64,000 nucleotides of DNA from Vitrella brassicaformis CCMP3155 (taxonomy: Eukaryota; Protista; Chromerida), in assembly GCA_001179505.1 (NCBI GenBank), contig CDMY01000225.1, positions 96,379 through 160,378 on the forward strand, in the 5' to 3' direction. This document shows, piece by piece, positions 17,641-23,569 of the stretch. The notes beneath the pieces were generated by a model, which was not told the origin of the DNA, ran no database searches, and worked only from the letters and a program-made list of their open reading frames with translations. Position 1 is the stretch's first letter, and each line of letters begins with the position of its first letter. A program made the position numbers and the translations under genes.

Positions 17641-18550
17641 CTTCGCCGCACGGGCTGTTTGAGCGCGAGACGCCCGCTAGACGCCCGCCCCCATCCGGGC
17701 CGCCCCCTGCTGCATGTGCGAGCTTCAGCCTCTTCCTGCCTTTTTTTTTCTTTGTGTGAGATTGGACAGTACACCACCAGGTGCTCACGCGAAAGTGCCG
17801 AACGTGTCACTCATCGTACATATCGAGATCCTTCCCTCCCTCCTCATATCACAATCACGTGCAACCAATCCCCCACCTGATAGACCCATCTTTGTCACTC
17901 ATCCAGTCAGTCAGTCAATCAGTCAGTCGACTCCCGGGTGGAGACGCGGGAAGAGCCCGCCGGTCGCCCCCAGGGCGAGCTCAGCCTCCAGCTTTTCGCC
18001 GCACCCGTGGGGTAGTGTGTGACTGACACATACCAACTTGGAGAGACATTCGTTAAGGGCCCATGTTGTGTTGTTTGTGTGGATTGTCCACTTGGCCGCC
18101 CTCTGTGCAGACATTCAATCATCTCCATACGACAATCAGCCGTCGCTTAGGGGAAGGATTGAAACTCATTTCCAAGGGTGGACTGGCTTCATTCCGTGGT
18201 GGACGCGCTGCTCGGCCGGCCACAGGCGTGTACTCAGCCATCCATATACAGAAAAATGCCTCTCGTGTCACCATCCGTCCAGCAGACATGCATTGCATGT
18301 GTACATCTGCGCGGCACTGTGCGAACAGGCCGCCCTCTCTCCTCCATTCCCAGACCGTCGACACACATCCATCCATCCATCTCCCCTGGCTCACACACAC
18401 ACACACACACACACACACAACGAAATGCCTCTCTCTCTCTCTCGGCATTGCTCAGCAGCAGCAAGAAATACTCTCTCAGACAGATGAGCACACCAGACAG
18501 CACCCAGACACACACACATCCATCCCTGCCTGTCAGTGTGGTCATCGTCA

Positions 18551-21500
18551 TCAGATGATGTTGAGCTCCCGAAATCTCTCGAGGAAGTATAGCCCCTTTG
18601 CGTCGTCCTTGTATCTCGCCTTGACGGCGTCATAGCCGTTCTGCGCCACATCCTTCAGCAAGCTACGCAGGGTGGGGTCCTGAACAGAATGAACAAAAAG
18701 GGACATACACACACGCACACACACACACACACACACAGCCACGGATGTTTGTGCGTATGGGTGGCAGGTCTTTGCGGCCGGCCGCTTACCTGTAGAGATT
18801 TCGCTAGGAACTTTTGTCCCGCCGAGTCGCCCACTGTCCTGTCGACGAATTTCTTCAAATCGGCGTCGGTCTCCTTGGCAATAAGCTCCTCGGGGCTGGG
18901 GGTGGGCGAGGGCTTCTCGCCCTCCTCTCGCACATTGATCTGCTCCCTTTGTTGCTGCTGGTCGCCCCCCTCCTCTGTGAAGATGTTGATCTGCCGGCCG
19001 CCCGGCTGCTGCATGCCGCCCATTGGGCCGCCCCGCACGATGCCGCCACTGAGGGAGCCGAACGGCCACGAATCGCCGAAAAACTCCTGATGTGATAGAA
19101 ACAAAGGGAGAGATGGGTGTGTGTTGGTGGCTGGCGTGTCATTGGCTGTGTGGTTGGGAACCTCGAATATTCTGTCGAATGGTGAGTCGAAGAGGGAGAC
19201 GAGACCGGAGCTGTCAGAGTCTGACATGCACACACACACACACACACACACATGTCATGAGCCGCGTGTGGGTGTCCATGTGTCCTTTTGTGGCTTGCTT
19301 ACATCCCATTGGGGACTCTTGAACGACGTCGGGCTGACCACACACACACAATACAGCAGACACACACGATCATCCATCCATCCATCCATCCGTGAATTCT
19401 CAGTGGACGGCTTTTACCCGTCTCCTTTGTGGTTGTCCCTTTGGTTTGCCGAAGACCCTTGCGTAGGCCAGCCGGTTGATGAGCTCCCGCTCGACGGTGC
19501 AGTCCTGATAATCCACCTGGCGGACACCACAGCACACAGACAGACAGCAGCAGAGTGTGGGGTCGTTCCATCCCTCCCTCCCTCCATCCCTCCCTCTGTC
19601 TCTGTGTACCCCTCTTTCGTCGAGCTCTCGCTTGTACTCCTCAAGCTTCAGTGGCTGAGGGATGGATGCGTGGATGACACAACACACCGGACGGCAGTGA
19701 AGGTGTACATGTGTCGTGTGTGTGTGTGTGTGTGTGGTGACCTTGTCTGCTTCCGGCACTTTGTCGAACTCAAGCTGACGAGAGCACACGAAGGGAGGCG
19801 GGATGAATGCGTCAGAGTGTGTGGCCGGATTTGCCTGACTGATGGCCCGCCTCGCCTCGCCTCGCCCACCTTGATTCTCCTGGCCTCGTCTGAGTAGTTG
19901 GTGATGCTCATCGTCCCCTCGTTCTTCGACCTGTGTGCACACACACACACAAATGGATGGATGGATGGATTGCCTGTGTCCTCGTTCGTTCTTACTTTTT
20001 CCTCTCCCCGGTTGGTTTGCCCTGTAATGACACCTCATACCTAGCGTACTCACGTATCAACTCTACACACACACATACACACACACACACACAAAGACAG
20101 AGGGAGAGTGAGGCGGCCATGTGAGCCGGTTCAGTGTGCGCTGCCCACGCACCAGATGCCTTAGTGAACTGTTTGTCCATTCCGCTCTCCGCCAGTTTGG
20201 TGGCCATGCTCTCAATCATGGCGCGCTTCCCCCGCTCGTCAAGAGACCGGAACTGGCCAGACCACAGACAGACAGACAGCACACAAGACACATGAACACA
20301 TGTGCATGAGTGCAGCCCGTCAGTGCAGGTGTGTCTGTGTCTGTGCGTACCTCGTTTGTCAGCCGCTCCACGGCTGCGTTCATGCGTTCCGCTGTGGGGT
20401 CCTGCAATAAATACACAGATGAAGATATGCATCAGCCAACGAGGGCTCCCCTGATCTCATGTGAGTGCAATGCTTACTGGGGGCGCCTTCTCCTCCTGCT
20501 CCTTCTTGACCACCGCAGCCCCACGCACACGCGTCTGACCAAAGCAGCTCACACACACCACACACGTGCACATGGATAGGCCATGTTGTCGTGTCATCGC
20601 TACCTCAGCGACTCTCCGTATGAGTTCGTCGGTGCTCCTGCAGTCCTTGTAGGAGACCCCCGCTGTCTTGAGCTCATCCTGCAGCTCCGAGAACTTGACG
20701 GCCCGCTGAGCGAGCTTCTGCTGCATAGACTGGAACTCCACCTGGATGCGCTCCCTGATTGACGAATTGGCCAACACATTGCATATATACGACGTTTTTG
20801 TGGCCGGTGGGTTGTGCGACTGCTCACTTGGTTTCGGCGTCTTGTTGTGCGGCTGCCGTGTCAGCCGCCTTGGTGTCCATGTCAGCTGTGGAGGTGGAGA
20901 TCGATGACACTGAGATCGGCACATCTGGAAAGAAAACCGACATTGCAGTGACAGTGACAGTGACGGCGGCGGTTTCTCCTCCTGCCTTGTGTGTCACCTT
21001 TCTTTTTCTCGGCGATTGGTGCTCTCAGCAGCGACAGTGTCTGGTCCTCAAAGTTCAGCAGCAGCCGACCAGCCTGCACACACAGGCGCAATGACGTGTG
21101 TTGTGGCATCTCGGCTCGTTAGTCCATTCTTACGCCCAGCACATCCAGGCCGAGCAGCATCGCAGGTTTGTCCGCCAAGCCAGCACGAGCAAACCAGGGG
21201 AAATCAGCCACATTCAGCTTCACATCCTGCAACACAGCAGACAAACAAAGGACAGAGAAGAAAGCAATCCGTGTCACCATCCTCCTCGCCATTCCTCCCC
21301 CCTCCCCTAGATCACCCACCCTCTTGAAGGCCTTGAGCGCCCCGTCGGTGCCCTTGACGCCACACAGCGGAAAGGCCGCCCTGTCGACCTCAATCGGTGC
21401 CCCGTCAATGCCGGTGGCCTTCATAACGCCCCGCTGCACGCCCTCGGCCTCCCTGTCGATGCCCACACTCCTCGCCGCAGGCCAGTTGACGATCGAGTAG

Positions 21501-22516
21501 GTTGAGCCGAGGTCCAACACGGCCGTGACGGGCGCTTCCTGCTCTGACAGGGCACCGTCGATGGCGAGGAGGGGCCCGGGGAGGGAGCTGACGGGCGTGG
21601 CGATGAGGGAGAGGTCCTTGCGATCGGCCGCTGCCTCTTGCAGGGCAGCCTGTCAGTGAATGAATGAGTGAAGGGGGCAAGGCAGATGTGGCCTCTGGTG
21701 TCGTGTCGTGGTGTGGCGTGGGTCAGTGGTTACCTTTGCGGCAGCGGCCTGTCCCTTGGGGTAGAGCTTGATCTTCCCCTCCAGAAAGTCCACATCAATG
21801 GCTCCGAACTGCGATAGGAAATCCAAACCCAATAAACCTGCACACAATCACACCATACCGACACACACGCTTGCACAGCTGCGCAACTGTTTGCCCTCCT
21901 CCCCTCCCTCTCCTGATGCCGCACCTGCCACGCCAGCAGGCAGCACTCCCGCTTGTGTGAGTACGGCCGCATCGAGGCTGACCTCCATGCCTCCCTCGGC
22001 GCCTCCCCCCACACGCACCCCCTCCACCCGCGCCACGCCCGTCTTGACGGGCAGCCCGGCAGCCGTGTAGGTCTCCCTGTCCTGCTCCTTCAGCGCCGCT
22101 CCCAGGGAGCTCACTGTGTCGCTCGTCAAGATTGACTGAGTGGAGCCCGTGTCGACCAGAAACCGCAGGTACTCCCCGTTGAGAAAGAGCTCGGTCGCCA
22201 GGTACTCCTTGGGCACTGACTCGGTGCCCCGCATCCGCCGGAATGGCAGCTGGAAGGCCTCGGTCTGTGTGGCCACCGCTGAACAGACGAGCCGTGTTGA
22301 CGACCGGCTTCGAAGGGGTGTTGGCAGGGCGGCTCTTCTGCATCGGAGGGAGAGTGCGGGGAAGGGCGAGTGGAGGAAGGCGGGGGACAGATGTCCGTGG
22401 TGGACATGGACATCGGTGCGATGAATGGCGATTGATGGGAGGACGGCAAAGGGAATCAGGAGGGCAGCAGCCAGCTGTGCATGGCAGCGGTGCCTCCTCT
22501 CACGTGGATCTGGCAT
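18551..22516 (-). CDS. Putative plastid-targeted tandem retropepsin-like aspartic protease with helical repeats and STI1-like C-terminus
   Basis: FLVDTGSTQSIL...GLLGLDFLSQF and VLDLGSTYSIV...MLLGLDVLG. All GT-AG junctions are phase-consistent through to QDPTLRSLLKDVAQNGYDAVKARYKDD...ELNII*. The N-terminus has a hydrophobic stretch, an SPAF motif and an R/S-rich leader. Confidence 0.8.
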
Positions 22517-22837
22517 GGCGGACAGCAGTCTTGTCAGCAGACAGAACCAATGAAAGAGATCAGGATTCGGGAAGGTCGAATCAAGAGATCTGGCAGATGA
22601 TGCTGCTCGCTGCTGTACTCAAGACACTTCAGAGGGGAGAACAGCGGACCAGCGGCGCGTGCGAGCTCGGATGAGGTGAACGATCCGCAGTCCTGTCGCT
22701 GAATGAATGCGGGGAAGCACAGTAAGCGTACGAATCAACCATCTGACGCCTTATACGTCATTCTACCCTGCGCCTTTGATTGATTGCAGGTGATTTGCTG
22801 CGACAGGTGACTCATTTCCTCTCCATTGTGCGTGGTG

Positions 22838-23569
22838 ATGCAAGGTGTCCCTCTCGTCGCTCAGGAGGACGACAGCCAACACGAAACGCAGCCCTATGAG
22901 ATCCGACACCCCCCTGCGCCCTTCGCCGACGCCGCACGAGATGCCGCCCGGCCAGAAGCGGCAGACAGCGGCACCAATAGTGACACCGTTCCGGACCGGC
23001 GGTCACGAGATGGCACGTCTGAGCGGCGGAAACGACAGAGATGTAGTGGAGAGGGGGAGAATGATGCTCATGAGGAGGCCGCCTGCATCGACCTGACTGG
23101 CGATGGAGGAGAGGGCGGGCGGCTTGCTTGCGGTGAGGAGAGTGGGGCTGCCTCTGCAGTACCAGCAGCAGCAGCAGCAGCAGCGCAAGAGGCGGAGCAT
23201 GAGGGCGACGGCGAGGGCGATGGCGACAGTCAGAAGTCATCCGACACGCTGGACTCTCTGCAACTGCTGGAGCTCCTGAGGAAGGTCAAGCGGAGAAGAC
23301 GCGACAGAGTCGTTCCATCTGGTGCACAACACGCCACCTCAGCTCAGCCTGCCGCCGCCGCTGCTGCCGCACATGCCAGTGTGGCTATAGGAGCTGGGAC
23401 TGCAGCAGCCGAGGGTGGCCACGGCAGCTTGATGCCGAGCGGCAACGAGGATGGGCTCTTGTCGCTTCTGAGCGGCGGTGTGGACGCAGCCCCTCCCCGG
23501 CTGGAGACGCTGCACAAGGAGGGCTGTGACGGAGAGGGCGGGCAGGGAGGGGATGGTGCAGGGGGCTAG
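22838..23569 (+). CDS. Hypothetical low-complexity acidic/Ala-rich protein
   Basis: Single open frame of about 243 codons. It may instead be an upstream exon of the Skp1-fusion gene. Confidence 0.4.
   Translation: MQGVPLVAQEDDSQHETQPYEIRHPPAPFADAARDAARPEAADSGTNSDTVPDRRSRDGTSERRKRQRCSGEGENDAHEEAACIDLTGDGGEGGRLACGEESGAASAVPAAAAAAAQEAEHEGDGEGDGDSQKSSDTLDSLQLLELLRKVKRRRRDRVVPSGAQHATSAQPAAAAAAAHASVAIGAGTAAAEGGHGSLMPSGNEDGLLSLLSGGVDAAPPRLETLHKEGCDGEGGQGGDGAGG

What the first reader, a model, noticed from the sequence alone, without database searches (positions are those of the whole stretch)
18551..22516. Unusual architecture: plastid-type leader, single-chain double retropepsin, three helical repeats and STI1-like tail
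Seen: every junction from 22516 to 18551 is phase-consistent, so segments that look like separate ORFs form one gene. It has two retropepsin units (DTG...LLGLDFL and DLG...LLGLDVL). It has three repeats: LKTAGVSYKDCRSTDELIRRVA, LAESGMDKQFTKASELIREYA and LDERGVDYQDCTVERELINRLA. It ends in DPTLRSLLKDVAQNGYDAVKARYKDD. Known: retropepsins need two Asp-bearing halves, Ddi1 couples a retropepsin with an STI1-like helical domain, and STI1 domains bind hydrophobic clients (Tic40, Hop). Inference: a self-contained organellar quality-control or processing protease, which I do not recognise as described.
Basis: partly seen in the sequence, partly recalled or inferred. Interest (0 to 1): 0.75.

Follow-up and report, generated by a model that had tools for sequence, protein, structure and literature searches.

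The report
Single-chain double retropepsin in Vitrella
The alga Vitrella brassicaformis has one 19-exon gene for an aspartic protease that carries both halves of a retrovirus-type protease dimer in one chain, followed by a helical tail found nowhere else; the protein is already in databases, but it and its small algal family have never been studied.

Summary
On the minus strand, 22516-18551 gives a 19-exon, all GT-AG, phase-consistent model of 823 aa. Residues 95-823 are identical to the public Vitrella brassicaformis protein CEL94712.1 / A0A0G4EG65, "Peptidase A2 domain-containing protein". The joined gene is therefore already annotated, and only the 94-aa leader is new.

- **Family:** about 15 environmental clusters, apparently eukaryotic (one contig provably so), share signal-peptide-like leader + SAP-like module + DTG unit + D[L/M]G unit.
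- **C-terminal half:** three 78-aa repeats, a disordered linker and a five-helix tail. It has no relatives or paralogs.
- **Not shown:** plastid targeting, catalysis and the fusion transcript.

The scan also noted this same stretch in another window (s1-201809), not on other DNA. Verdict: a new variant of a known kind, of moderate interest.

The parts
18551..22516 (-). Whole gene: 19 exons and 18 GT-AG introns, 823 codons plus stop. Exons (high-low): 22516-21925, 21837-21734, 21649-21320, 21226-21134, 21073-20998, 20924-20828, 20754-20604, 20534-20478, 20401-20351, 20252-20153, 20062-19996, 19930-19870, 19774-19742, 19654-19610, 19516-19418, 19333-19303, 19220-19162, 19086-18790, 18679-18551.
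   Evidence: splice sites, phase, single stop. (residues 95-823 identical to public protein P0001). (CEL94712.1 / A0A0G4EG65).
22235..22516 (-). 94-codon N-terminal leader that is absent from the public model. It has a basic n-region (residues 1-14), a hydrophobic core (residues 15-31, nt 22474-22424), and a 62-residue Ser/Thr/Arg/Pro-rich, acid-poor stretch that resembles a transit peptide.
   Evidence: first in-frame ATG after a stop; hydropathy 2.16; 9 K/R against 2 D/E. (Pro91, upstream of the annotated Met95, falls in an invariant family column). Targeting itself is inferred.
22232..22234 (-). Met95, the start codon of the public 729-aa model.
21734..22207 (-). Retropepsin unit 1 (exon 1 end plus exon 2; intron 21924-21838). 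Catalytic DTGS at 22153-22142; LLGLDFL at 21835-21815.
20998..21649 (-). Retropepsin unit 2 (exons 3-5). Degenerate catalytic loop DLGS at 21514-21503; LLGLDVL at 21157-21137. Orthologs end at about the point where exon 5 ends.
20828..20924 (-). Exon 6: a low-complexity Ser/Thr/Ala linker between the protease core and the repeats.
   Evidence: pLDDT below 50 at P0001 residues 305-316.
19418..20754 (-). Three 78-aa helical repeats (exons 7-15). The helix-loop-helix cores lie in exon 7 (R1), exons 10-11 (R2) and exons 14-15 (R3).
   Evidence: exact 78-aa period; z 13.7 / 6.8 / 3.9. (helices, pLDDT 70-89 in the cores). (in-register but non-significant match to the family's SAP-like module).
18895..19333 (-). 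Disordered Gly/Gln/Pro/acidic linker (exons 16-17 and the first two thirds of exon 18).
   Evidence: pLDDT 26-40 at P0001 residues 551-648.
18554..18894 (-). C-terminal five-helix tail (end of exon 18 plus exon 19; intron 18789-18680), DP/STI1-like.

Best explanation
This is a single-copy nuclear gene of Vitrella brassicaformis. It encodes a clan AA (retropepsin-type) aspartic endopeptidase in which the two halves of the usual homodimer are fused in one chain. Unit 1 carries a canonical DTGS catalytic loop. Unit 2 carries DLGS, which keeps the catalytic Asp but replaces the Thr/Ser. The two units fold against each other like a retroviral protease dimer, which would give one cleft with two Asp residues (shown by modelling, not by assay). 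The protein is a divergent member of a small, unstudied family of apparently eukaryotic environmental sequences built as signal-peptide-like leader, SAP-like module, DTG unit, D[L/M]G unit. The duplication predates the family. In Vitrella the N-terminal SAP-like module is missing. Instead the chain continues past the point where the orthologs stop, into a lineage-specific extension of about 430 aa: three 78-aa helical repeats, a disordered linker and a five-helix DP/STI1-like tail. Inferred steps: translation starts at the upstream ATG (22516); the bipartite-looking leader takes the protein through the ER to the complex plastid or its periplastid space; and the C-terminal modules recruit unfolded or chaperone-bound clients to the protease.
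Confidence: 0.68

Rival explanations
1. The protein starts at the annotated Met95 and is cytosolic. The upstream open frame would then be 5' UTR that only happens to look like a bipartite targeting signal.
For: The public model starts at Met95. Leader GC3 is 0.66 against 0.76 for the rest, and an off-frame reading reaches 0.70. BLAST similarity to orthologs only starts near residue 100.
Against: There is no stop between the ATG at 22516 and Met95, and no earlier in-frame ATG. Every full-length family member has a hydrophobic N-terminus and about 100 residues before unit 1. Pro91 sits in an invariant family column. A start at Met95 leaves only about 12 residues before the first strand.
Confidence: 0.25
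2. The gene model fuses two genes. One would be a protease gene ending near exon 5, as in all orthologs. The other would be a separate downstream gene for the helical-repeat and tail protein.
For: Orthologs, including the closest eukaryotic one, stop a few residues after unit 2, exactly where exon 5 ends. The C-terminal half has no relative linking it to proteases. Retention of intron 5 would give a stop 38 codons later, at 20884-20882. Exon 6 contains an in-frame ATG.
Against: Exons 5 and 6 are only 73 nt apart, with clean GT-AG sites in phase, and all 18 junctions keep one frame. The Augustus model used RNA-seq intron hints (PMC4501334) and agrees exactly. There is no room for a terminator and a promoter.
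Confidence: 0.12
3. It is a pseudo-protease. The degenerate DLG loop would make the pseudo-dimer catalytically dead, and the protein would act as a binding or inhibitor-like scaffold, as conglutin gamma and the xylanase inhibitors do among pepsin folds.
For: Unit 2 lacks the Thr/Ser of D-T/S-G. Inactive pepsin-fold proteins are among the fold matches. Vitrella's units sit on long branches of 1.27 and 2.13.
Against: Both Asp residues and both following Gly residues are kept in all nine members examined, despite 22-30% overall identity. Both hhGLD motifs are kept. In a covalently linked dimer the Thr/Ser 'fireman's grip' matters less for stability (my own knowledge).
Confidence: 0.15
4. It is a domesticated protease from an LTR retrotransposon.
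For: Pfam gag-asp_proteas and RVP give hits. The genome holds many retroelement-type Asp_protease_2 hits in long open frames.
Against: The gene has 18 introns, is single copy, and has no RT or integrase nearby. The nearest sequence relatives are bacterial-type clan AA proteins: TIGR02281 at 3.8e-10 and APRc at 4e-7, against FIV protease at 0.019.
Confidence: 0.03

Closest known systems
Bacterial exported single-chain double retropepsins (PDB 9iy9, Bacteroides fragilis 'exported protein / putative endopeptidase'; about 800-aa Melainabacteria and Terriglobia proteins)
   Different: The bacterial proteins keep DTGA in both units, or DTGA plus DSGA. Sequence identity is only 22-25%. Their relation to the eukaryotic family is unresolved in the unit tree. 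They have no 78-aa repeats and no DP-like tail.
Uncharacterised environmental eukaryotic family (P0004, P0013-P0022, P0005; some labelled by IMG as 'clan AA aspartic protease, TIGR02281 family' or 'predicted aspartyl protease')
   Same: Co-linear homology over both units, D[L/M]G[S/A] in unit 2, hydrophobic N-terminus, and one intron position shared with the L003 ortholog.
   Different: These proteins have 280-450 aa. They carry one SAP-like module before the protease and stop right after unit 2. Vitrella lacks the N-terminal module and adds about 430 aa at the C-terminus.
Rickettsia APRc (ApRick) and TIGR02281 clan AA proteases
   Different: APRc is a membrane-anchored single unit that must homodimerise. 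The TIGR02281 score of 40 bits is below the 57.95 cut-off.
Pepsin family A1
Ddi1 (family A28)
   Different: PF09668 scores 15.8 bits against a cut-off of 26. No UBL or UBA was found. Ddi1 is a homodimer of single units.
Hop/Sti1 DP2, Hip and Tic40 C-terminal (STI1-type) domains

Membership tests
Clan AA retropepsin-like, Pfam Asp_protease_2 (PF13650) | HMM match above the gathering score | tested here: met
   Unit 1 scores 53.9 bits against 24.3. Unit 2 alone scores 21.5 bits, below the cut-off.
Clan AA retropepsin-like, Pfam Asp_protease_2 (PF13650) | Retropepsin fold in each unit | tested here: met
Clan AA retropepsin-like, Pfam Asp_protease_2 (PF13650) | Catalytic D-T/S-G-A/S loop and a C-terminal hhG[RL]D motif | tested here: inconclusive
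   Unit 1 has DTGS and LLGLD. Unit 2 has DLGS (Asp and Gly kept, Thr/Ser lost) and LLGLD.
Clan AA retropepsin-like, Pfam Asp_protease_2 (PF13650) | Aspartic endopeptidase activity | not testable with these tools
   Needs an enzyme assay.
Single-chain (pseudo-dimeric) double retropepsin, 9iy9 type | Two units in one chain packed like the retroviral homodimer | tested here: met
TIGR02281 clan AA aspartic protease | Score above the curated cut-off | tested here: not met
   40 bits against 57.95.
Ddi1 / family A28 | PF09668 above the cut-off, with UBL and UBA domains | tested here: not met
   15.8 bits against 26, and no UBL or UBA hit at E <= 10.
Pepsin family A1 (PF00026) | HMM match | tested here: not met
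   No hit for P0001 at E <= 10. The resemblance is in fold only.
SAP domain (PF02037) / ARMET_C (PF10208) | HMM match in the three repeats | tested here: not met
   No hit at E <= 1 per exon or at E <= 10 on P0001. PF10208 finds nothing in the six-frame search of the genome, though its control also found nothing. Repeats against the family's SAP-like module: in register, P 0.0016, probability 16%. Atlas SAP+ARMET_C cluster 0.77, a lead only. In other family members the N-terminal module hits SAP below threshold in 5 of 16 (best E 0.0026).
STI1-HOP_DP (PF17830) | HMM match in the tail | tested here: not met
   No hit. PF17830 finds other Vitrella loci but not this gene at E <= 10.
STI1-HOP_DP (PF17830) | DP-type five-helix fold | tested here: inconclusive
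Bipartite plastid-targeting signal of complex red plastids | ER signal peptide followed by a basic, hydroxylated, acid-poor transit peptide | tested here: inconclusive
   Hydrophobic core scores 2.16, followed by 62 residues with 9 K/R, 2 D/E and 12 S/T. No SignalP or ASAFind was available, the cleavage site is unknown, and the leader is outside the public CDS.
Bipartite plastid-targeting signal of complex red plastids | Organelle localisation | not testable with these tools
   Needs tagging or proteomics. No entry was found in the supplements of PMC6668581.
LTR-retrotransposon protease | Embedded in gag-pol with RT/integrase, multicopy | tested here: not met
   Single copy, 18 introns, no adjacent pol domains.

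The most novel reading that the evidence does not exclude
Algae with complex plastids carry their own organellar 'proto-pepsin'. This would be an asymmetric single-chain retropepsin (DTG plus D[L/M]G) imported through the ER. In Vitrella it has been welded to a co-chaperone-like module (three SAP/MANF-C-like repeats plus a DP/STI1-type client-binding domain). The result would be a chaperone-coupled aspartic protease for plastid or periplastid protein quality control or preprotein processing. No organellar protease of this kind has been described.
Probability: 0.2. Interest if true: 0.75.

Novelty: new variant of a known kind. Interest (0 to 1): 0.5.

Why it matters
Pepsin-type proteases are thought to have arisen when a retropepsin-like half was duplicated and fused. 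Natural single-chain double retropepsins are living examples of that step. This one shows the next step too, because the two active-site loops have become asymmetric, and that asymmetry is conserved across a eukaryotic family. If the leader works, it would add an aspartic protease to the protease inventory of complex plastids in the closest photosynthetic relatives of apicomplexan parasites. The known plastid proteases (Clp, FtsH, Deg, SPP, PreP, from my own knowledge) are serine or metallo enzymes. The unique C-terminal half may be a case of a protease fused to chaperone-type adaptor modules. All of this can be tested with standard expression, mutagenesis and localisation work.

Tried and rejected
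- **Full-length relatives:** a word-index search with P0001, and with residues 500-729 alone, found only the protein itself.
- **HMMER with exon 1:** the search of 1.84 billion representatives gave 7 hits and no Chromera ortholog.
- **Paralogs of the C-terminal modules:** none in the Vitrella genome, and no similarity to Vitrella's own STI1-DP loci.
- **Pfam SAP, ARMET_C and STI1:** no hit on the exons or on P0001. A phmmer search of the tail against PDB gave only noise.
- **Family SAP-like module against the Vitrella repeats:** an HMM gave nothing. hhalign gave an in-register but non-significant match.
- **Taxon of the family members:** not resolved. The dynein fragment on L003 is only 40% identical to Vitrella, so that organism is not a near relative.
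- **Literature:** searches for a plastid retropepsin or this architecture found nothing relevant. A Phaeodactylum study lists a chloroplast-predicted STI1 protein and an Armet protein among stress-induced chaperones (PMC8252717), which is a lead only.
- **Localisation tables:** the supplements of PMC6668581 hold no entry for this protein.
- **Joined model:** I assembled the 823-aa model only inside local scripts, to check phase and to compare it with P0001. I did not search or fold it. Searches used exons by reference or the public protein P0001, so the leader was examined only as part of exon 1.
Full report
**Where the window comes from.** The window lies in a 72.7-Mb assembly of 1064 contigs. 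The protein it encodes is recorded as CEL94712.1 / UniRef A0A0G4EG65, "Peptidase A2 domain-containing protein", Vitrella brassicaformis CCMP3155. The assembly size and scaffold number match the published Vitrella genome (PMC4501334). Vitrella is a chromerid, a photosynthetic relative of apicomplexans with a four-membrane plastid of red-algal origin.

**Checking the observation.** I read the minus strand in three frames and placed splice sites by coordinate. This gave 19 exons joined by 18 GT-AG introns of 60-110 nt. The frame is 2472 nt long with one terminal stop, which makes 823 codons. All quoted motifs are there:
- DTGS (22153-22142) and LLGLDFL (21835-21815) in unit 1
- DLGS (21514-21503) and LLGLDVL (21157-21137) in unit 2
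- the three repeats
- the DPTLRS... tail in the last exon

A HMMER search of 1.84 billion representatives with exon 1, given by reference, returned a 729-aa protein that is 100% identical from residue 95. That protein equals residues 95-823 of my model letter for letter. The public model came from Augustus with RNA-seq intron hints, so it confirms all 18 junctions independently. What the public model lacks is the first 94 codons.

As the operators asked, I did not search or fold the joined 823-aa model. I built it only inside local scripts, to check phase and identity. Searches used single exons by reference or the public protein id P0001.

**The protease core.** Pfam Asp_protease_2 matches unit 1 strongly (3e-14, 53.9 bits). 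It matches unit 2 only weakly: 21.5 bits at exon level, below the 24.3 cut-off. Structure settles the question for unit 2.
- An AlphaFold2 model of P0001, made with a 16-sequence family alignment, has pLDDT of about 90 across residues 10-300.
- Foldseek agrees: 9iy9 at 2.4e-11, and tethered HIV protease dimers at TM 0.70.

The model therefore packs the two units as the two halves of an active retroviral dimer. I could not read the coordinates, so I did not measure the Asp-Asp geometry.

**The family.** A profile of the first hits found about 15 clusters of 280-450 aa. All come from metagenomes, metatranscriptomes or Logan assemblies, and none is named beyond "predicted aspartyl protease". They align with the Vitrella protein co-linearly over both units. 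Their architecture is a hydrophobic N-terminus, a module that resembles SAP, unit 1 with DTGA/S, and unit 2 with D-M-G or D-L-G; the protein then ends.

The evidence that the N-terminal module is SAP-like is weak. Pfam SAP scores below threshold in 5 of 16 members, with a best E of 0.0026. The family profile touches the SAP-like C-domain of CDNF at E 0.4.

All nine members I examined keep the Asp and the Gly of unit 2 and none keeps Thr/Ser. A maximum-likelihood tree of the separated units puts all eukaryotic unit 1s in one clade (95/87) and all unit 2s in another (99/97). Vitrella is inside both, on long branches. The duplication and the asymmetry are therefore ancestral to the family.

One member, P0005, lies on an 11.9-kb eukaryotic metagenome contig (L003) together with dynein and MCM5 fragments. 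There the gene is interrupted after "VLPSGVDG", the same place as Vitrella intron 1. Its unit 2 reads DLG as in Vitrella, and it stops a few residues after unit 2.

**Bacterial counterparts.** A scan of one genome per bacterial and archaeal species found no ortholog. It did find single-chain double retropepsins at 22-25% identity: exported proteins of about 800 aa in Melainabacteria/Obscuribacterales with DTGA in both units, and Terriglobia proteins with DTGA plus DSGA. One of these matches 9iy9 by sequence (E 6e-4, "FIFDTGAG"). "Two retropepsin units in one chain" is thus an existing, if barely described, kind. The tree does not resolve from which bacteria, if any, the eukaryotic family derives.

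**The leader.** The ATG at 22516 is the first in-frame ATG after a stop. The 94 residues before the annotated Met95 fall into three parts:
- a basic n-region
- a 17-residue hydrophobic core (Kyte-Doolittle 2.16)
- 62 residues with 9 K/R, 2 D/E and 12 S/T

This is the pattern of a bipartite signal for complex plastids. Chromerid plastid proteins use such signals, and the Phe after the cleavage site is less conserved in Vitrella (PMC6668581).

Two further hints favour the upstream start. All full-length family members carry a hydrophobic N-terminus that, by eye, is followed by F, W, Y or L and a basic stretch. Pro91, upstream of Met95, falls in an invariant column of the family alignment. Against it, the public model omits the leader, GC3 does not discriminate, and BLAST similarity begins only near residue 100. 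Targeting remains an inference.

**The C-terminal half.** Orthologs end where Vitrella exon 5 ends. Vitrella continues for about 430 residues.
- *Repeats.* The three repeats have an exact 78-aa period and score far above shuffles (z 13.7, 6.8, 3.9). Each is modelled as a long helix, then a helix-loop-helix around L..L...G[VM].Y.DC....ELI.
- *SAP resemblance.* The motif looks like SAP or MANF C-terminal domains, but no Pfam model hits it. A profile-profile comparison with the family's own N-terminal SAP-like module is in register but not significant (P 0.0016, probability 16%).
- *Linker and tail.* Residues 551-648 are disordered and rich in Gly, Gln and Pro. The last 77 residues or so form five helices at pLDDT 64-93.
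- *Diatom lead.* For the repeat region, the Atlas points to diatom clusters carrying SAP+ARMET_C (feature score 0.77). It also points to a 420-aa cluster with STI1-HOP_DP+SAP+ARMET_C (TM 0.27).
- *Uniqueness.* The C-terminal half has no relative among proteins of 400-1275 aa, no paralog in the genome, and no similarity to Vitrella's own STI1-DP genes.

**How it most likely works.**
- *Shown:* one annotated gene; two retropepsin folds in one chain, modelled as a pseudo-dimer; membership of a conserved family with an asymmetric pair of active-site loops; a unique repeat-and-tail extension.
- *Inferred:* it is an active endopeptidase with one cleft and two Asp residues. It enters the ER and goes on to the plastid or periplastid space. 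The C-terminal modules bind unfolded or chaperone-held clients.

I put 0.68 on the core statement and about 0.2 on the full chaperone-coupled organellar protease reading. Four rival readings remain: a cytosolic protein starting at Met95 (0.25), a mis-fused model (0.12), a pseudo-protease (0.15), and a retroelement origin (0.03).

**Comparison with what is known.** It works like a tethered retroviral protease, or a minimal pepsin.
- It is not a member of family A1: no PF00026 match.
- It is not a Ddi1: PF09668 is below the cut-off, and there is no UBL or UBA.
- It is not a TIGR02281 protein: 40 bits against 57.95.

**Novelty.** The protein is public but unnamed, and the fold arrangement exists in bacteria with a solved structure. 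The eukaryotic family, its conserved DTG/D[L/M]G asymmetry, its apparent secretory or plastid routing and Vitrella's C-terminal extension are, as far as the libraries searched show, undescribed. That makes it a new variant of a known kind. The scan had already noted this same stretch from another window (s1-201809).

Noticed in passing
window 22232-22516 (-): The public gene model (CEL94712.1) starts at Met95 and drops a 94-codon upstream open frame that looks like a bipartite targeting signal. This may be a systematic 5' truncation in the Vitrella annotation, which would hide organelle-targeted proteins.
   Followed up: partly
window 20882-20997 (-), intron 5: Orthologs end where exon 5 ends. 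If intron 5 (73 nt) were retained, the frame would run 38 more codons to a TGA at 20884-20882. That would give a protease-only isoform resembling the orthologs.
   Followed up: no
window 21227-21319 (-), intron 3: Intron 3 is 93 nt long and has no in-frame stop, so exons 3-4 read through as one ORF (21652-21122). Retention would insert 31 residues inside retropepsin unit 2. Introns 1, 2, 3, 4, 10, 13, 14, 15 and 17 all have lengths that are multiples of three.
   Followed up: no
window 18392-18419, 18703-18737, 19229-19252, 19710-19736, 20065-20093 and others: Several introns and the 3' flank carry (CA)n/(TG)n dinucleotide or CATC/ATGG/TCCC tetranucleotide microsatellites.
   Followed up: no
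L003:5640-7640 (+) (NCBI metagenome GCA_022599615.1, contig JAHZIS010091285.1): A eukaryotic contig with dynein heavy chain and MCM5 fragments carries the closest ortholog: SAP-like module, DSGA unit, DLG unit. One intron sits at the same position as Vitrella intron 1. Prokaryote-style gene calling split it into pieces (P0005 is only its first exon).
   Followed up: partly
L011, L014, L020, L024, L027, L030, L035, L036, L058 (Melainabacteria/Obscuribacterales MAGs): A conserved family of exported proteins of about 800 aa with two DTGA retropepsin units 139 residues apart. It is related by sequence to the unpublished-looking PDB entry 9iy9.
   Followed up: partly
window 22826-23569 (+): The neighbouring ORF on the opposite strand starts about 300 nt from the ATG at 22516. 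The two genes are head to head and would share a short bidirectional promoter region.
   Followed up: no
G000:C287:18947-19060 (+) and C287:50192-50305 (-): Two STI1-HOP_DP hits with identical scores lie on opposite strands, 31 kb apart on one contig. This suggests an inverted duplication of a Hop/Hip-type gene.
   Followed up: no
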